From sequence record NC_061446.1: a DNA stretch of 64,000 nucleotides; one strand, written 5' to 3'. Each line of letters opens with the position of its first letter. Positions within the stretch are counted from its first letter, which is position 1. The notes under the pieces were generated by a model. The model saw only the letters and a list, made by a program, of their open reading frames with translations, did not search any database and was not told where the DNA came from. A program made the position numbers and the translations under genes. Of this stretch, positions 21,319 through 31,856 are shown in pieces.

Positions 21319-21824
21319 ACGAATTACCGATGAATCTCGATCAGGCTGAACACATTATGGCTAGTGTGTTTACGCTCGCTGGTTCATCGAAATCCAAACG
21401 TCGCGCTACTGCCGCTATGCTCGTCCACTTTCATCACGGCTTCCCAACTGTTATCAGTAGCGGTGTGAACGGTACGCAGCCTGGTGAAAGCAACGTTATG
21501 GAGAACGACGACCTGACGCTCTCGCTCGACACTGTTATTCATGCGGAGGTGAACTGTCTCAATCGCATGGAAGAATACAGCATGTGGGCTGACGAGAAGG
21601 ACATTCTGTTCTGTACCGATTCGCCGTGTCCTAACTGCTTGGCTGATCTCGAAGCCGAAGGCGTTAAGACTGTCGTATATGCGCGTGAGTATCGTCTGAC
21701 TGAACATCTCGACGCATCGAAGATCAAGATGTTCTGCCTCGATATGAAATCGGTAGAACTTCGTATGCTTCGCGGCATCGAGCGCATGAAAGAAGTGATC
21801 GCAACAACACCAGTGTCTAACTAA
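21303..21824 (+). CDS. dCMP deaminase-like zinc-dependent deaminase
   Basis: SGVNG, HAEVNCL, SPCPNC; start may be ATG 21330. Confidence 0.85.
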   Translation: MRCPLNELPMNLDQAEHIMASVFTLAGSSKSKRRATAAMLVHFHHGFPTVISSGVNGTQPGESNVMENDDLTLSLDTVIHAEVNCLNRMEEYSMWADEKDILFCTDSPCPNCLADLEAEGVKTVVYAREYRLTEHLDASKIKMFCLDMKSVELRMLRGIERMKEVIATTPVSN

Positions 21825-21849: not shown

Positions 21850-22566
21850 ATGGAAAACAAATTCGAATCAGGCTTTAAATGCCACCCGCTCACTAAAGAG
21901 CAGCAGGACCAAGCGTTCCGTGAGTTCGATAGACAGCAACAAAAGTCGCTTGAGCGTCTGACGCAGATGATTGAATCTGATCCCGTGTTGAGGGCCCAGC
22001 ACGAAGAGGCACGTCGCCGCGAGCACCAGCAGAAGTTTGGTGACATGGATTTTTCCAAACTCGAAGAACGTGTAGCTGATACGTTTGAACATTCATCTGG
22101 TGTCGTTCGTGGTGTAGTTCAACGCTATCCACGTATGTCCGACAATCTGCCTCGTGATGGTCGTATTAAAGTTGACGTAATACCAGGGAAACGTATGCTG
22201 CAAACTGATATTCATCTCGGTGATGTAAAGACCGAAGACCTGTCGCTTGCTATGGCTGCCGTTGCATTCGGACTTAGTGGTGAGCAGCTTGGCGTCATCC
22301 CTGCTCCTGGTGGCGGTCAGTTCGTTGAACCGGAAACGCAGTTGAGTTACATCGACGAAGCACCATTTATTCCAAATCATCTACCTCAGCACTATCTGCA
22401 AGCTGATACAGGCCCCATGCCTGCGTTTGGTCGTGCTTTGCGTATAGCTCCGAAAGATTCATGGTCTGCGGAGCGCCGTGATCGTGCTGCGACGTCTGCA
22501 CCTGCTCGTAAGAAACTCCGTGCCCGCACACGCGCCCAGAAGAAAGCGCGTCGTAAACAACGCTGA
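21850..22566 (+). CDS. hypothetical protein with basic C-terminal tail
   Basis: 238 aa; ends RKKLRARTRAQKKARRKQR. Confidence 0.75.
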   Translation: MENKFESGFKCHPLTKEQQDQAFREFDRQQQKSLERLTQMIESDPVLRAQHEEARRREHQQKFGDMDFSKLEERVADTFEHSSGVVRGVVQRYPRMSDNLPRDGRIKVDVIPGKRMLQTDIHLGDVKTEDLSLAMAAVAFGLSGEQLGVIPAPGGGQFVEPETQLSYIDEAPFIPNHLPQHYLQADTGPMPAFGRALRIAPKDSWSAERRDRAATSAPARKKLRARTRAQKKARRKQR

Positions 22567-22576
22567 GGTAACAGCA

Positions 22577-23068
22577 ATGAGTAATGAGATTAAACAAGCC
22601 TCGATGGAGAGCTACAACGCGCTTGGCCTGCCTAGTGATTTTATGAATCTCGTATCAGACGAAGATGCCGCAGACTTTGTGGCTAAACTGTCTGATGAGA
22701 AACGCCGTAAGCTGACTGTCGGTCTGGCTTTGCTTCATCTGCAAATTCCCGATGCGATTCGTTATGAGTTATTGACGAACCACATCGACGAAACTGAGCG
22801 TCTGGTTCACAATGCGTTCCAGGACCTGAGCGCTTCGCTGGTAAACAAGCTGTCGCATGAAGGTAGCGCTGAAACTAAATCAACACTCGGTAGTGTTCGT
22901 CTGGCAATGCTGATGAACATTCTGGGATTTGATGATGCTACTCTTAGTGGCGTCTTGAACGACCCTATCCTGACGCGCCGCGCAAGCCTTGTTGCTGTGA
23001 CTGGCTTGAATGAGATGGGTCAGAAAATCCAACAACTGTACGACGAGAAAAACAATGAGCCAACCTAA
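22577..23068 (+). CDS. hypothetical protein
   Basis: GAGG RBS before ATG 22577. Confidence 0.7.
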   Translation: MSNEIKQASMESYNALGLPSDFMNLVSDEDAADFVAKLSDEKRRKLTVGLALLHLQIPDAIRYELLTNHIDETERLVHNAFQDLSASLVNKLSHEGSAETKSTLGSVRLAMLMNILGFDDATLSGVLNDPILTRRASLVAVTGLNEMGQKIQQLYDEKNNEPT

Positions 23069-23198
23069 CGTAGCAACTCAATCAGAAGAAATGGATCTGG
23101 ATGCAATCCCTGGTCTGGACCCGGATGCAGTGGCACCGAACGGTGTTGATGCAGCAGCATCTGATGAAGGTTGTGAAGGCGGCGCCTGCAAAATCTAA
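23055..23198 (+). CDS. 47-aa acidic peptide ending in an NrdA-like redox tail (GCEGGACKI)
   Basis: ATG 23055 to TAA 23198, then a terminator; C-terminus matches E. coli NrdA GCESGACKI at 8 of 9 positions. Confidence 0.7.
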   Translation: MSQPNVATQSEEMDLDAIPGLDPDAVAPNGVDAAASDEGCEGGACKI

Positions 23199-23201
23199 TT
23201 C

Positions 23202-23224
23202 ATGGGGCCTAGTGCCCCATTTTT
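23202..23224 (+). terminator. rho-independent terminator
   Basis: ATGGGGC-CTAGT-GCCCCAT-TTTT. Confidence 0.8.
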
Positions 23225-23227
23225 CGT

Positions 23228-23770
23228 TTGAGGATAAAAACGATGCAAACAGCCTATCGCTGTAAACATTGTCGCGGCATCTATACTGGAAAAATCAGTA
23301 GTTGCGACTGCGGCGGAAGCTCAAAGTTCGAGTATACGTTAGTGCAAATCATCGACGTGCCTGAGAACGAAGACCAAGTACCTCCGTTCAAAGATCTCAA
23401 ACACTCTCGCGCTCAACGCTACGTGAACGTTAAAGACGGCACGTATGGCAACGGCATCTATGAACTGCGTGAGAAGCGTGAGGGAGAACGTTACTGGTGG
23501 ACACATCTCGGTACTATGCAGAGCGGGTTCGATAGCACTGATATGCCTTACAAGTTCTGCGAAGATAATCGTAAGGCGAACGTTCTGCTGGCGGCTGCCG
23601 GTCCTGTTATGCTCGAAGCGCTGTACATGGCGTATCAGTATTTCCATCTCAAGCGTGAGGTTCAAGGCAGTTCGATTAAGAACGACAGCCGACTGTCCAT
23701 CATTGCCGACGCGATTCGTCAGGGCACTGACCTGTCTGTGTTCGACACACTTCAAATACCTAAGGAATGA
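23228..23770 (+). CDS. hypothetical protein with N-terminal Cys cluster
   Basis: CKHC...CDC; start possibly ATG 23243 after GAGGA. Confidence 0.7.
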   Translation: MRIKTMQTAYRCKHCRGIYTGKISSCDCGGSSKFEYTLVQIIDVPENEDQVPPFKDLKHSRAQRYVNVKDGTYGNGIYELREKREGERYWWTHLGTMQSGFDSTDMPYKFCEDNRKANVLLAAAGPVMLEALYMAYQYFHLKREVQGSSIKNDSRLSIIADAIRQGTDLSVFDTLQIPKE

Positions 23771-25562: not shown

Positions 25563-25900
25563 CACCAGCAATCCGCTTTAACGAGCAGACCTGCGATCTG
25601 CTGAAAAAGATCTTCGGCATCAACAAGCCCTTCTTTGTTGTGCGCCGAGACGTAATCATCGAAAACGATAAGCAGTTCGGTGAGCGTGTGTATCTGGCCA
25701 ACGGCACTCATGTCGTTACCGTGCCTAACGTTCAGGGCCTCGATCTCGGCGATAAGCTCTATCTCGCAGAAGACAGTGAGGTGTACGAGTGGCATCCTCA
25801 TTTCGACCGCCCCAAATATGAAGCGAGCAACAATCAAAAGGAAGCGCTCGCTTTTGGCTTTCACCCTATCGTCCATCATACAGACAGCCGGAACTCTTAA
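25559..25900 (+). CDS. hypothetical protein
   Basis: ATGA-coupled; TAATG-coupled to thyA. Confidence 0.7.
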   Translation: MTPAIRFNEQTCDLLKKIFGINKPFFVVRRDVIIENDKQFGERVYLANGTHVVTVPNVQGLDLGDKLYLAEDSEVYEWHPHFDRPKYEASNNQKEALAFGFHPIVHHTDSRNS

Positions 25901-27003
25901 TGAACAATCAACCTCTCGATCTGCGCGATCCCAACCAGTACGAACTGTATTCCCTGCACTGCGTGGATGAACAGTACATCAATCTCGGCAATGCTATTCT
26001 GATGCACGGTACTGACGAAACAGATCTCGGCCGTACCGAAGACACGTGGCGTACTCTGATTGGTATTGGCTTTCAGTTGACCAACACGCTGATCGCTTTC
26101 CCTGCGCTGCTGTCTGCACGTAAGAACTGGTTCGCTGCCGTTGATGAAATGTGCTGGATGGCGCGCGGTGAAACAAACATCGGCAGTCTCAATTCCAAAA
26201 TCTGGAACGAGTGGGCTGACGAAGACGGCGAATGCGGTCCTATCTACGGTCTGATGTGGCGTATGTGGCCTGATATCAAAACCTTCCCGACTATTGAGTC
26301 GATGAAGGCGCGTCAGATTAGCGATGCTGAGATCGAGCGCATCTCCAAAGAGATCAATCGCATGAAGGCTGCTGGCTACACTGAAACAGAAATGGCTGAT
26401 GGTCGTGTGTGCTACGAGGGTACGATCGACCAGTTCGCTGATGCTCTGCGTCAGGTAATGAATCGCAGTCGTTCACGTCGCATCCGCGTTCAGGCATACA
26501 ATCCGGCGTATCTCAACATGCAGGGTCTACCGCCATGTCACACTGAGTTTGAGTTCAATGTGACCAAGCCCACACTGTACGAAACGGCTCAGATGGAAGC
26601 ACGTCAGATGGCACCTGCCGAAGACTCGCTGCACATCACGGTGACAATGCGTTCCAACGACACACTTTTAGGGCGTCCGTTTAATATCATCGGCTACAGC
26701 GCCATGCACCAAATGATCGCGAAGTGGGCAGGCATGAACGTTGGCAGCTTTACGCTGAACACTACCAACACGCATCTGTACACTCACCACTTTGAAGCGT
26801 TCAAAAAGCAAAGTGAACAGTGGGCAGTTCTCGCAGACAACATGAAACGCACTGGCGAACCTGTTGTCTATCCTATGCTGGAAATCAGTGACGACATTCT
26901 TGGCCTGACGCCGGAAGAGTTGCTGGATAACGCCAACGCTGAATGGTTCCAGCTTCTCGATTATGCACCGGCACAGGCAGTCAAAGGACGGGTGACAAAG
27001 TGA
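25900..27003 (+). CDS. thyA: thymidylate synthase
   Basis: EMCWMARGETN, IWNEWAD..GECGPIYG, LPPCH, RSND.LLGRPFNI, HLYTHH. Confidence 0.92.
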   Translation: MNNQPLDLRDPNQYELYSLHCVDEQYINLGNAILMHGTDETDLGRTEDTWRTLIGIGFQLTNTLIAFPALLSARKNWFAAVDEMCWMARGETNIGSLNSKIWNEWADEDGECGPIYGLMWRMWPDIKTFPTIESMKARQISDAEIERISKEINRMKAAGYTETEMADGRVCYEGTIDQFADALRQVMNRSRSRRIRVQAYNPAYLNMQGLPPCHTEFEFNVTKPTLYETAQMEARQMAPAEDSLHITVTMRSNDTLLGRPFNIIGYSAMHQMIAKWAGMNVGSFTLNTTNTHLYTHHFEAFKKQSEQWAVLADNMKRTGEPVVYPMLEISDDILGLTPEELLDNANAEWFQLLDYAPAQAVKGRVTK

Positions 27004-29726: not shown

Positions 29727-31856
29727 ATGATCATCAAGCCGCCTACGATGAAGGAAATCAACAAGCTGGATAAACCCTGGCGTGGTATGAGTTTCTTCGC
29801 AGGTTGCGGTGGGTCTTCGACCGGTCACAAGATGGCCGGTATCGACATTGTGTTGAGCAACGAGTTTGTTGACTCAGCACGAGAGTCCTACGAAGCGAAC
29901 CATCCGACAACTAAAGTGCTGCCTCATGACATTCGCCGCTTAGACCCAGGCAAGCTGTTGCGCTTCGCTGGTCTGAACAAAGGCGAACTGGATTTACTTG
30001 ACGGTAGTCCTCCTTGCTTCACCGAAGACACGATCATTCATACAGCAGACGGCATGAAGTTCATTTCGGACATGAACGTCGGCGATAGAGCAATGACCAG
30101 TGTCGGGCAGTATCATCCCGTGTACGACACGATGGTGCGACCTTACGTCGGCACGATGCACAAAATCGAAACACTGATCAGCAGCAACAAAGCAACGCCC
30201 GAGCATCCGTTCTTTATCAGACGTCCACTTGAGGCGGGTGGCTTCTCTGATCCGTTCTGGTGCGATGCGAAAGACGTGCAGGAAGGTGATCTACTCGGTA
30301 CACCTCGTGTTACACCTGACCAGCCTGCTGATGTGTACCACAATCAGATGAATCAATTGCCGAAGATGATTCGTCAGTGGGTAAGCATTCCTGAGTTCTG
30401 GTGGATGGTAGGTCACTGGTGTGATCGTGGTTCAATCGAAACTATCGGTGGCATTGAAGCAGTTAGCTTCGAGTCGCATACCAGTATTGAAAACGCGATG
30501 ATTGAGCAGGCGTTTGACGCGCTTAAACTCAGCAGCCTGAATCGCATCGAAACAATGACAGCGCAACGTAGAACGTTCCGTACTGTTATTGATGTTGAGC
30601 TGGTGCAGTTTCTGCGCCGCTTTATCAGTCACGGCAACAACACGTTCTCTCGTCGTCTGCCTGCCATGTTGTTCCACATCAACGCGGAACTGAAACAGCA
30701 ATTCATTCTGGGCTGTGCTGGCATGGATTATGTGACTGCTATGGGCACGGGCATTGCTATCACTTCTGCAAGCAGGCGCTTCCTGCTTGAACTGAATTAC
30801 CTGTGCTGCTCTGCATTCAATCGTCCTTTGTTTGACGGATTGACTTGGGGCGACCTGTATTTCGGTAGTTCGTTAACGCCTCGTGAACGTAACAGTGCGC
30901 GTGAGCATATCGGCTACCTGTTCTTGCAGGACGAGCACAACTTCTTCCATGAGTTCAGCAAAGAAGACTCGCATCTCTGGACAGAAGTGATTGAGAACCT
31001 AGCGTATCAAGCAACCTGTGACGTCTATAACTTCTCTGTTGAAGTGGACGAGACGTATGTGGCGAACGGTGTTGTTGTTCACAACTGCAAAGGCTTCTCT
31101 ACTGCTGGCGTGAAAGAAGAAGGCTGGGGCAAAGAAGTTAAGTACAGCGATAACAAGTATCAGCAGGTTGATGACCTGTTCGATCAGTATTGTCGTATGT
31201 TGAAAGGCATGATGCCGAAAGTGTTCACTGCGGAAAACGTTAGCGGTCTTGTTAAGGGTGCCTCGAAAGGTTACTTCCTTGAGATCATGCGAACGTTTGA
31301 CGAGATTGGCTATTACGTCCGAGCGCCGCTGCTTAATGCTGCATGGCTTGGTGTGCCTCAGTCCCGTGAACGTATCATCTTTATGGGTGTACGCAAAGAC
31401 GTAGCACACGCTCTCGGTTATAAGAGCAATCAGGCTGCTGTGCCTGACGTAGTGCCATGCGATACAATGGCCTTCCTTGCAGACGCACTGCCTCACATTC
31501 AGCGATATAAGTCCACGAAGAAGGATATCATCACGTATCTTCCTGCGATGAACGGACCGATGCCGACAATCACTGCGGCTGATGCTATAGCGTATGAGAC
31601 GGCGCGATTCTCGTCTGCTGGGTTCGTTGAAGACAACAAAGGTCATCGTCGTAAGTTAACCATCGACGAACTGAAAGTTGTTTCCGGCCTGCCGTCAGAC
31701 TATAAGCTGAAAGGCAAGTTTGAAGAACAGTGGGAGCGCCTAGGTCGTATCTGTGTTCCGGCAATGACACAGGCTGCATCGAAAGCTCTTATCGAACATG
31801 TCCTGCTGCCTTATGCTAAGAAGCGTAAGAAGAAGCCTGGCGAAATCTTTAAGTAA
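29727..31856 (+). CDS. C5 cytosine DNA methyltransferase-family enzyme with intein; predicted carboxymethyltransferase
   Basis: Motif I FFAGCGG, IV GSPP/CKGFS (split by intein), VI ENV, VIII QSRER, X LGRICVP (Arg at 31746-31748 instead of Asn). Confidence 0.85.
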   Translation: MIIKPPTMKEINKLDKPWRGMSFFAGCGGSSTGHKMAGIDIVLSNEFVDSARESYEANHPTTKVLPHDIRRLDPGKLLRFAGLNKGELDLLDGSPPCFTEDTIIHTADGMKFISDMNVGDRAMTSVGQYHPVYDTMVRPYVGTMHKIETLISSNKATPEHPFFIRRPLEAGGFSDPFWCDAKDVQEGDLLGTPRVTPDQPADVYHNQMNQLPKMIRQWVSIPEFWWMVGHWCDRGSIETIGGIEAVSFESHTSIENAMIEQAFDALKLSSLNRIETMTAQRRTFRTVIDVELVQFLRRFISHGNNTFSRRLPAMLFHINAELKQQFILGCAGMDYVTAMGTGIAITSASRRFLLELNYLCCSAFNRPLFDGLTWGDLYFGSSLTPRERNSAREHIGYLFLQDEHNFFHEFSKEDSHLWTEVIENLAYQATCDVYNFSVEVDETYVANGVVVHNCKGFSTAGVKEEGWGKEVKYSDNKYQQVDDLFDQYCRMLKGMMPKVFTAENVSGLVKGASKGYFLEIMRTFDEIGYYVRAPLLNAAWLGVPQSRERIIFMGVRKDVAHALGYKSNQAAVPDVVPCDTMAFLADALPHIQRYKSTKKDIITYLPAMNGPMPTITAADAIAYETARFSSAGFVEDNKGHRRKLTIDELKVVSGLPSDYKLKGKFEEQWERLGRICVPAMTQAASKALIEHVLLPYAKKRKKKPGEIFK
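30015..31085 (+). mobile_element. intein (357 aa) at the MTase catalytic PC motif; degenerate LAGLIDADG remnants
   Basis: Starts CFTEDT, block B ATPEHP, ends YNFSVE...VVHN; +1 residue is the catalytic Cys. Confidence 0.93.

What the first reader, a model, noticed from the sequence alone, without database searches (positions are those of the whole stretch)
23055..23198. Stand-alone 47-aa mimic of the ribonucleotide reductase redox tail
Seen: an acidic flexible peptide ending DEGCEGGACKI-stop, followed by its own terminator. Established: E. coli NrdA ends DDGCESGACKI, and this Cys754/Cys759 pair shuttles electrons from thioredoxin/glutaredoxin to the active site; L. leichmannii class II RNR ends similarly (CEGGAC). 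No RNR catalytic gene is in the window. Inference: a trans-acting electron shuttle that boosts host or phage RNR turnover, or a decoy for Trx/Grx. It lies near dCMP deaminase and thyA.
Basis: partly seen in the sequence, partly recalled or inferred. Interest (0 to 1): 0.78.

Follow-up and report, generated by a model that had tools for sequence, protein, structure and literature searches.

The report
Free-standing ribonucleotide reductase redox tail
This 47-residue phage gene encodes, as a free peptide, the flexible two-cysteine tail that normally ends the large subunit of bacterial ribonucleotide reductase and recharges it; the same stand-alone tail is a widespread, unnamed family in giant phages and in Neisseria and Moraxella.

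Summary
The window is Erwinia phage pEa_SNUABM_30. ORF 23055-23198 is annotated gp036 (hypothetical) and ends ...DEGCEGGACKI, followed by a hairpin and T-run.

It belongs to a family of more than 100 acidic peptides of about 40-120 aa. Of 113 members, 109 end C-x4-C-K-I/L. Column by column, the last 11 positions match real class Ia NrdA tails, and some 12-residue ends are identical. A family profile scores 22-39 bits on NrdA C-termini, against at most 11 bits for shuffles. The alignment starts where the NrdA core ends.

The key case is a set of AT-rich phage contigs. There nrdA stops just before the tail, and the gene immediately upstream, a nucleotidase-like protein, carries the tail at its own C-terminus.

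This phage and SPN3US have no class I RNR of their own. In phages the peptide gene sits among dNTP-metabolism genes. Neisseria keeps a copy between iscS and iscU although its NrdA has a tail.

Best reading: a detached, trans-acting RNR dithiol tail that works on host NrdA through host thioredoxin or glutaredoxin. Whether it boosts or blocks turnover is not shown. No database names the family, and I found no paper describing it.

The parts
23055..23198 (+). gp036: 47-aa acidic, unstructured peptide; a stand-alone homologue of the class Ia NrdA C-terminal redox tail
   Evidence: ORF and translation; annotated CDS; PHROG 24014 E 1.4e-17; family alignments A1 and A2; purifying selection; AF2 gives no secondary structure
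23139..23195 (+). Tail-equivalent segment (residues 29-47, from N-G-V-D to the end). It corresponds to the NrdA stretch from the 'DG' that ends the catalytic core to the C-terminus. The Cys pair is Cys40 (23172-23174) and Cys45 (23187-23189), followed by K-I.
   Evidence: PDB profile hit on E. coli R1 750-761; tblastn of E. coli NrdA; column shares equal to NrdA tails; profile alignment to NrdA tails starting at the DG
23055..23138 (+). N-terminal acidic segment (residues 1-28, including the I-P-G-L-D-P motif kept in jumbo-phage members). It has no counterpart in NrdA. A role in docking is inferred only.
   Evidence: Alignments A1 and A2; a profile of N-terminal halves finds no NrdB or other RNR chain in the PDB
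23202..23230 (+). Intrinsic-terminator-like hairpin (7 pairs, 5 G-C) and T-run directly after the stop codon
   Evidence: an identical hairpin follows the homologous gene in L018 and L020
22577..23068 (+). gp035 (163 aa, no known family). Its stop overlaps the start of gp036 by 14 nt, so translational coupling is possible. Context only: it is not conserved with the peptide in other phage lineages.
21330..21824 (+). dCMP deaminase (context: dNTP-metabolism neighbourhood)
   Evidence: PF00383, E 2e-10; annotated
25900..27003 (+). Thymidylate synthase, annotated only as hypothetical in the record (context: dNTP-metabolism neighbourhood)
   Evidence: PF00303, E 1.2e-54

Best explanation
gp036 is a detached class Ia ribonucleotide reductase alpha-subunit tail, made as a free, disordered, acidic peptide. 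Shown: it is homologous to the NrdA tail from the end of the catalytic core to the C-terminal C-x4-C-K-I; it is conserved under purifying selection; it sits among dNTP-metabolism genes; and nature uses such a detached tail next to a tail-less nrdA. Inferred: the reduced peptide enters the active site of the host (Erwinia) NrdA as the enzyme's own tail does. There it reduces the active-site disulfide left by each turnover and becomes a disulfide itself. Host thioredoxin or glutaredoxin then re-reduces it, since both recognise this very motif. In a phage that has no RNR of its own but heavy DNA demand, extra diffusible tails would sustain or raise host dNDP output. The N-terminal acidic segment may replace the covalent tether by docking the peptide; this step is purely inferred.
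For: (1) Identity with NrdA tails. The family profile's 11 best PDB hits are E. coli R1, aligned end to end. The last 11 columns use the same residues in 82 distinct peptide ends and 66 distinct NrdA ends, and three 12-residue ends are identical in both sets. The family HMM scores 22-39 bits on NrdA C-terminal 70-mers, against at most 11.1 bits for 660 shuffles, and the longest alignment (26 residues) begins at the DG that closes the NrdA core. The Erwinia NrdA tail (P0219) matches gp036 at 9 of the last 12 residues. (2) Natural split. In contigs L022-L024 a class Ia nrdA that is 70% identical to the E. coli gene stops at ...NTRDGSGDQL, with no Cys pair, and only 46 nt separate it from nrdB. 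The gene directly upstream (P0101, 224 aa, related to phage 5'-nucleotidases at E 7e-9) ends with the family tail. (3) Both cysteines, their spacing and the G-A-C-K-I/L end are kept in 109 of 113 members, and the 4 exceptions are read-through or truncated calls. This fits a dithiol/disulfide cycle better than mere binding. (4) Context. Neighbours are dCMP deaminase and ThyA here, ThyA and MazG in 15 jumbo-phage loci, dNMP kinase in L142 and DNA polymerase with a 5'-3' exonuclease in L045, and DHFR with nrdAB in L022. (5) No RNR in this phage or in SPN3US, so the client must be a host enzyme. (6) A thioredoxin gene directly follows the peptide gene in Moraxella bovoculi. (7) The peptide is predicted to be unstructured.
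Against: No experiment bears on it. The host NrdA already carries its own tethered tail, whose local concentration a free peptide can hardly match, so a simple 'more tails, more flux' benefit is not obvious. Neisseria keeps the peptide inside the isc (Fe-S assembly) operon although its NrdA is tailed. This shows the free tail has a role other than replacing a missing one, and that role may not concern RNR. Only one lineage with a tail-less nrdA was found, and three cultured phage NrdAs closest to it keep their tails. Whole-database searches with the family profile did not bring up NrdA at E <= 1e-3. The similarity is therefore short, and its significance rests on the terminal anchoring and the shuffle control. 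No phage thioredoxin or glutaredoxin was found, though only weak tests were used.
Confidence: 0.5

Rival explanations
1. Competitive mimic or decoy. The free tail occupies host thioredoxin or glutaredoxin 1, or the NrdA active-site channel, and so lowers re-reduction of host RNR or diverts host thiol-reducing power. This would make it a small disordered RNR-pathway inhibitor, similar in logic to yeast Sml1.
For: The motif is exactly what Trx/Grx and the NrdA active site recognise. The host enzyme already has a tail, so an added copy competes with it by construction. Small disordered inhibitors that interfere with the R1 tail are known (Sml1, as summarised in PMC6382339).
Against: These phages have no RNR of their own and carry ThyA, dCMP deaminase and dNMP/dTMP kinases that need dNDP/dNMP supply, so blocking host RNR would starve them. 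A binding decoy needs neither cysteine strictly, yet both are invariant. In L022 the detached tail sits beside a tail-less nrdA, where only a productive role makes sense. Neisseria and Moraxella keep the gene in their chromosomes.
Confidence: 0.2
2. General small dithiol carrier. The family is a portable Trx/Grx-rechargeable Cys pair that serves clients other than RNR, for example persulfide or Fe-S chemistry of the ISC machinery in Neisseria. In this phage it serves some other thiol-dependent step.
For: In Neisseria, Eikenella and Kingella the gene lies between iscS and iscU: 13 of 38 genome loci and 47 of 70 metagenome loci. Other bacterial neighbours are a thioredoxin, a hemerythrin-domain protein and an Nramp transporter.
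Against: Every phage context found is DNA-precursor or replication metabolism, not Fe-S assembly. The tail matches NrdA tails specifically, down to the K-I/L end. In some Neisseria nrdA lies directly after hscB, about 2.5 kb from the peptide gene, so the isc link may itself be an RNR link.
Confidence: 0.17
3. Functionless remnant: a leftover 3' end of a captured nrdA gene that happens to keep an open frame.
For: It is homologous to the 3' end of nrdA, and phages often carry gene fragments.
Against: It has its own start, its own terminator and an annotated CDS. It is conserved across at least five jumbo-phage genera and many metagenomic phages, with pN/pS 0.06-0.42 at near-saturated synonymous divergence. 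68 clusters at 50% identity were found among 1.84 billion proteins. It has no DNA similarity to E. coli nrdA. The peptide ends differ from the host's at position -6, so it is not a recent capture.
Confidence: 0.03
4. Precursor of a ribosomally made, post-translationally modified peptide (bacteriocin-like).
For: It is short and acidic with a Cys-containing C-terminus. One distant member gave a weak NCBIfam hit to a thiazolylpeptide precursor model (E 0.037, 14 bits against a cut-off of 25).
Against: The hit is below cut-off, applies to one member only, and lies in the N-terminal part. No modifying enzymes, transporters or immunity genes are nearby in any of the contexts read. The match to NrdA tails explains the C-terminus fully.
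Confidence: 0.02

Closest known systems
C-terminal redox tail of class Ia ribonucleotide reductase alpha subunit (E. coli NrdA, Cys754/Cys759)
   Same: The same end motif, D-D-G-C-x-(G/S)-G-A-C-K-I/L, at the extreme C-terminus. The same acidic, disordered character. Homology runs from the end of the catalytic core to the last residue. The Cys pair presumably has the same partners: Trx/Grx and the active-site cysteines, the latter from established knowledge of the enzyme.
   Different: It is not attached to any RNR. It is a separate 47-aa gene product in a genome without RNR. It carries an extra N-terminal acidic segment with no counterpart in NrdA.
Tail-less nrdA plus tail-bearing upstream gene in metagenomic phage contigs L022-L024 (found here)
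   Same: The same family tail, supplied from a separate gene.
   Different: There the tail is fused to a 5'-nucleotidase-like domain and sits next to its evident client, a tail-less NrdA. Here it is a bare peptide with no phage RNR.
Naturally split RNR genes (Pseudomonas aeruginosa NrdJa/NrdJb; the split nrdA of Aeromonas phage Aeh1). Recalled from my own knowledge, not tested here.
   Same: RNR function divided over two polypeptides, with the C-terminal piece carrying the re-reduction cysteines.
   Different: Those pieces are large parts of the enzyme encoded beside the rest of it. gp036 is the tail alone, and the enzyme is the host's.
Sml1 (yeast) and Spd1-type small disordered RNR regulators
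   Same: Small, intrinsically disordered proteins acting on the large subunit at the step where its C-terminal Cys pair regenerates the active site (PMC6382339).
   Different: Those are inhibitors without a Cys pair and without similarity to the tail. gp036 is the tail itself.
Dedicated RNR reductants (thioredoxin, glutaredoxin, NrdH) and the Grx domain fused to NrdB in Facklamia ignava (PMC6187632, listed)
   Same: Modular, movable parts of the RNR electron-supply chain. The Facklamia case shows that such parts can be re-wired by gene fusion or fission.
   Different: Those are folded thioredoxin-fold proteins with C-x-x-C. gp036 is unfolded, has C-x4-C, and would sit one step further down the chain.

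Membership tests
Class Ia RNR alpha (NrdA) C-terminal redox tail | Two cysteines spaced C-x4-C within the last 8 residues, ending K-I or K-L | tested here: met
   gp036 ends C-E-G-G-A-C-K-I. 109 of 113 family members and the NrdA tails share this end.
Class Ia RNR alpha (NrdA) C-terminal redox tail | Sequence homology to authentic NrdA tails beyond the Cys pair | tested here: met
   The 11 top PDB profile hits are E. coli R1 750-761. Column shares match over the last 11 positions and three 12-residue ends are identical. The HMM scores 22-39 bits against at most 11.1 for shuffles, with alignments of up to 26 residues.
Class Ia RNR alpha (NrdA) C-terminal redox tail | Flexible, unstructured segment | tested here: met
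   AF2 with 52 sequences gives no secondary structure, pLDDT 64 and pTM 0.21. This is a prediction only.
Class Ia RNR alpha (NrdA) C-terminal redox tail | Covalently continuous with the RNR catalytic barrel (PF02867) | tested here: not met
   It is a stand-alone 47-aa ORF with its own start and terminator. There is no Pfam RNR domain in it or its neighbours and no NrdA or NrdB anywhere in the genome.
Class Ia RNR alpha (NrdA) C-terminal redox tail | Shuttles reducing equivalents from Trx/Grx to the active-site cysteines | not testable with these tools
   Inferred from homology and from the split arrangement in L022.
Stand-alone tail peptide family (PHROGs 24014, 14561, 38753; unnamed) | Significant match to the family profiles; short acidic protein ending in the tail motif | tested here: met
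   PHROG E-values 1.4e-17, 4.7e-14 and 9.9e-9. 63 and 68 relatives were found in the two large protein searches.
Thioredoxin / glutaredoxin / NrdH | Thioredoxin fold with a C-x-x-C active site | tested here: not met
   No Pfam or NCBIfam hit; spacing is C-x4-C; no predicted fold.
NrdB (beta subunit) C-terminal tail mimic | Similarity of the N-terminal acidic segment to the beta tail that binds alpha | tested here: not met
   A profile of eight N-terminal halves (A3) against all PDB sequences at E <= 10 returned no RNR chain.
RiPP / thiazolylpeptide precursor (TIGR03892) | Score above the curated cut-off; adjacent modification genes | tested here: not met
   gp036 has no hit. One distant member scores 14.4 bits against a cut-off of 25. 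No modification genes appear in any context read.
Sml1/Spd1-type RNR inhibitors | Sequence membership in those families | tested here: not met
   No Pfam family of any kind matches gp036. Functional likeness was not tested.

The most novel reading that the evidence does not exclude
Free RNR tails are a distinct, widespread class of diffusible dithiol peptides. RNR-less phages use them to take over the re-reduction step of the host's ribonucleotide reductase, making host dNDP synthesis faster or independent of the state of the enzyme's own tail. Neisseriaceae and Moraxella have fixed the same peptide as a housekeeping link between thiol redox, Fe-S assembly and RNR.
Probability: 0.3. Interest if true: 0.85.

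Novelty: new variant of a known kind. Interest (0 to 1): 0.78.

Why it matters
The Cys-pair tail of RNR has been studied for decades as a part of the enzyme. Here it is a gene of its own: conserved, unannotated, present in many giant phages that lack RNR, in small phages, and in the chromosomes of Neisseria (inside the isc operon) and Moraxella. One phage lineage has split the tail off its nrdA. If the peptide works in trans, it is a very cheap way (47 codons) for a virus to act on the host's rate-limiting enzyme for DNA precursors. It would also be a new kind of small redox carrier in bacteria. It gives a name and a testable role to three PHROG families of unknown function and to an overlooked small gene in a major human-associated genus.

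Tried and rejected
1. A conserved three-gene module (gp034-gp035-peptide). Genes of the same size precede the peptide in SPN3US, but they are not detectably homologous, so I dropped it.

2. The N-terminal half as a mimic of the NrdB tail that binds alpha. A profile search of the PDB found no RNR chain, so this is not supported.

3. A RiPP precursor. There was only one sub-threshold hit for one distant member.

4. Recent capture from a host nrdA. There is no DNA similarity to any of 5,426 E. coli genomes, and the peptide ends differ from enterobacterial NrdA at position -6.

5. An RNA element on either strand. Rfam found nothing at E <= 1.

6. A phage-encoded thioredoxin or glutaredoxin partner. 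tblastn with a Moraxella thioredoxin and a C-x-x-C motif scan found nothing convincing, and the one C-P-Y-C protein (gp269) has no Grx domain. These are weak tests.

7. Relatives of the fused protein P0101. There are none in IMG/VR, and in cultured phages only the nucleotidase part has relatives.

8. Tail-less NrdA in the cultured phages closest to L022 (Privateer, SSU5, Va2). All keep a tail.

9. Literature. Searches on RNR tails in phages, on SPN3US gp234 and on the motif string found no description of a stand-alone tail. Zhang et al. 2007 is not held.

10. The first attempt to scan genome contigs with alignment A2 failed for lack of a conserved stretch. I repeated it with the closer set A4.

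All sequences used come from tool outputs.

Full report
What the window is. The window equals bases 1-64000 of Erwinia phage pEa_SNUABM_30 (NC_061446.1, 259,771 bp, genus Alexandravirus, host Erwinia amylovora). The finding's ORF is the annotated CDS MPK69_gp036, 'hypothetical protein'.

The observation. ORF 23055-23198 (+) encodes 47 residues ending DEGCEGGACKI. It has 10 acidic and 1 basic residue. Its ATG overlaps the stop of upstream gp035 by 14 nt. A 7-bp G+C-rich hairpin at 23202-23220 with a T-run follows the stop, and the same hairpin follows the homologous gene in other Alexandravirus genomes. AlphaFold2 with a 52-sequence alignment predicts no secondary structure (pLDDT 64, pTM 0.21). 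Rfam finds no RNA family on either strand. dCMP deaminase (21330-21824) and thymidylate synthase (25900-27003, annotated only as hypothetical) lie nearby.

It is a real, selected gene. PHROGs holds three families of unknown function that match it (E 1.4e-17, 4.7e-14, 9.9e-9). Pfam and NCBIfam hold nothing. The large protein collections give 63 relatives with a word-indexed profile search. An exhaustive HMM search of 1.84 billion representatives gives 68 clusters at E <= 1e-3. Nearly all are 38-120 aa. tblastn finds it in 65 phage records, most of them jumbo phages: Alexandravirus, Derbicusvirus, Erskinevirus (phiEaH2), Huxley/Machina, Seoulvirus (SPN3US), Cronobacter CR5 and Proteus 7. Over the last 31 codons pN/pS is 0.06-0.42 while synonymous divergence is near saturation; for example, window against Derbicus shows 21.5 synonymous and 7.5 non-synonymous differences.

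It is the NrdA tail. A profile of the family searched against every PDB sequence returns E. coli R1 as its 11 best hits. In each, the last 12 profile positions align to R1 residues 750-761, end to end, at E about 0.8, which is not significant alone. I fetched E. coli nrdA and nrdB from NC_000913.3; the accession came from the term I entered in the literature search, which found papers that contain it. tblastn of NrdA against the whole phage genome gives 23163-23195 as its top hit (9 of 11 identical, E 1.5), near-tied with two chance-level hits, so on its own it is weak. A search with the NrdA C-terminal region gave 120 enterobacterial NrdAs, five of them named Erwinia. E. pyrifoliae NrdA ends ...QDDGCESGACKI, and Symbiopectobacterium NrdA ends ...DDGCEGGACKI. 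Scans of genome and metagenome contigs brought in further authentic NrdA tails of gamma- and beta-proteobacteria that end ...DDGC(E/A)GGACK(I/L). I then compared 82 distinct peptide ends with 66 distinct NrdA ends. The commonest residue agrees at 10 of the last 11 positions. Position -6 is the exception: G 87%/S 13% in the peptides against S 59%/G 39% in NrdA. Both cysteines and the Gly at -5 are at or near 100% in both sets, and three 12-residue ends are identical between the sets. A family HMM scores 22-39 bits on NrdA C-terminal 70-mers, while 660 shuffles of those 70-mers reach at most 11.1 bits. The longest alignment (26 residues, 38.6 bits) starts at the D-G that closes the NrdA core. 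So the second half of the peptide corresponds to the whole NrdA tail. The first half, acidic and carrying an I-P-G-L-D-P motif in jumbo phages or a D-L-D-x-L-D motif elsewhere, has no NrdA counterpart. It also shows no likeness to NrdB tails.

The decisive natural case. One relative, P0101, is 224 aa long. Its first 170 or so residues resemble phage 5'-nucleotidases (E 7e-9 and 2e-6), and its C-terminus is the family tail. It is encoded directly upstream of nrdA-nrdB and next to a DHFR gene in three returned contigs of about 29% G+C (L022-L024); five contigs in all carry the protein. That NrdA is 70% identical to E. coli NrdA up to residue 740. It then stops at ...NTRDGSGDQL, with no Cys pair, and only 46 nt separate it from nrdB. 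Here the tail has been moved from the enzyme to a neighbouring gene, which makes sense only if the tail works in trans. This arrangement is rare. The three cultured phage NrdAs closest to it that I read keep their tails, and no relatives of P0101 are in IMG/VR.

Who is the client in this phage? The complete genome has no annotated RNR. It has no tblastn match to E. coli NrdA or NrdB other than the tail itself, and no RNR domain in 12 large unannotated ORFs. SPN3US, from an unrelated jumbo lineage that also carries the peptide (SPN3US_0234), likewise has none. No phage thioredoxin or glutaredoxin was found, but only with weak tests. The client is therefore most likely the host class Ia enzyme, and the reductant is host thioredoxin or glutaredoxin. 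This step is inference.

Context elsewhere. In 15 jumbo-phage loci the gene lies 2-3 kb after thyA and about 60-100 nt before a MazG-like pyrophosphohydrolase. In smaller phages it lies between RdgC and a dNMP kinase, after a DNA polymerase and a 5'-3' exonuclease, or between RusA and the terminase. The two genes upstream in the window (gp034, gp035) are not conserved with it. In bacteria the gene is chromosomal. In Neisseria species, Eikenella and Kingella it sits between iscS and iscU, sometimes after inserted cassettes such as a Fic module. In Moraxella it sits between aroE and an acyl-CoA dehydrogenase, and in M. bovoculi a thioredoxin gene follows it directly. Neisseria NrdA has its own tail (...DDGCAGGACKI), and in some genomes nrdA lies just after hscB, about 2.5 kb from the peptide gene. 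So a free tail coexists with a tailed enzyme in cells, as it must in infected Erwinia.

Mechanism and rivals. From established enzymology, the alpha tail's Cys pair reduces the active-site disulfide after each turnover and is itself reduced by thioredoxin or glutaredoxin. For eukaryotic R1 this is summarised in PMC6382339. My recollection, not checked here, is that the tail of one R1 monomer can serve the neighbouring monomer. The best-supported reading is that gp036 performs this cycle as a diffusible peptide on host NrdA (confidence about 0.5). The main weakness is that a free peptide must compete with a tethered tail, so the benefit is unclear unless the N-terminal segment docks it. A decoy or inhibitor role (0.2) fits the mimicry but not the phages' dependence on host RNR, the invariance of both cysteines, or the L022 arrangement. 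A general dithiol-carrier role with non-RNR clients (0.17) is suggested by the isc linkage in Neisseria. A dead gene fragment (0.03) and a RiPP precursor (0.02) are contradicted by the data.

Novelty. No Pfam or NCBIfam model exists and the PHROGs carry no function. No paper in the searched library describes a stand-alone RNR tail. The part itself is well known, but its existence as an independent, widespread gene is not. I rate it a new variant of a known kind.

Slip. All sequence statements above come from tool outputs.

Noticed in passing
window 29727-31856 (+), gp048: A C-5 cytosine DNA methylase (PF00145, E 6e-38) whose N-terminal part is interrupted by an intein-like Hint/intein-splicing region at about residues 96-453. 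The record annotates it only as hypothetical.
   Followed up: no
window 22354-22380 (+), inside gp034: The 9-residue motif D-E-A-P-F-I-P-N-H of gp034 recurs (7 of 9 identical, E 0.004 in a pairwise test) in the N-terminal extension of longer members of the tail-peptide family such as P0017. It may be a shared short docking motif or chance.
   Followed up: partly
L010, L011, L049-L058, L090-L135 (Neisseria and relatives): An unannotated 42-aa gene of this family sits between iscS and iscU across many Neisseria species, Eikenella and Kingella. The iscS-to-peptide gap holds variable inserted cassettes (a Fic-domain pair in L011, two unknown AT-rich genes in L010) or nothing (L054).
   Followed up: partly
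L063 8195-8515 (Moraxella bovoculi): A thioredoxin-family gene (PF00085) starts about 70 nt after the stand-alone tail gene. In L069 the neighbours are an Nramp transporter and a hemerythrin-domain protein.
   Followed up: no
L018 2091-2249 and L020 2091-2249 (Alexandravirus 2910A and SNUABM_3); L019 2373-2537: In other Alexandravirus genomes the syntenic gene has a different middle part containing R-D-G-G-G-E, which recalls the R-D-G-A-E-D that begins the NrdA tail. In two of them the end is C-E-G-G-G-C-K-I (Gly for Ala), as in the NrdA of Vibrio phage Va2.
   Followed up: partly
L031 9041-10108 (IMG/VR jumbo-phage contig): The open frame that ends in the tail runs back 355 codons without a stop, so the tail may be fused there to the upstream gene product. 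Alternatively the true start may be internal.
   Followed up: no
L022 1944-4970: The tail-less nrdA is 1008 codons long because of an intein-like insertion between E. coli positions about 440 and 439-740 (weak Pfam Intein_splicing hit).
   Followed up: no
L005 34065-35828 and L006 14134-16020 (same phage, outside the window): Two paralogous large proteins (gp113, gp146) each carry a KMPT-N domain (PF20294, E about 1e-18). Both are annotated as hypothetical.
   Followed up: no
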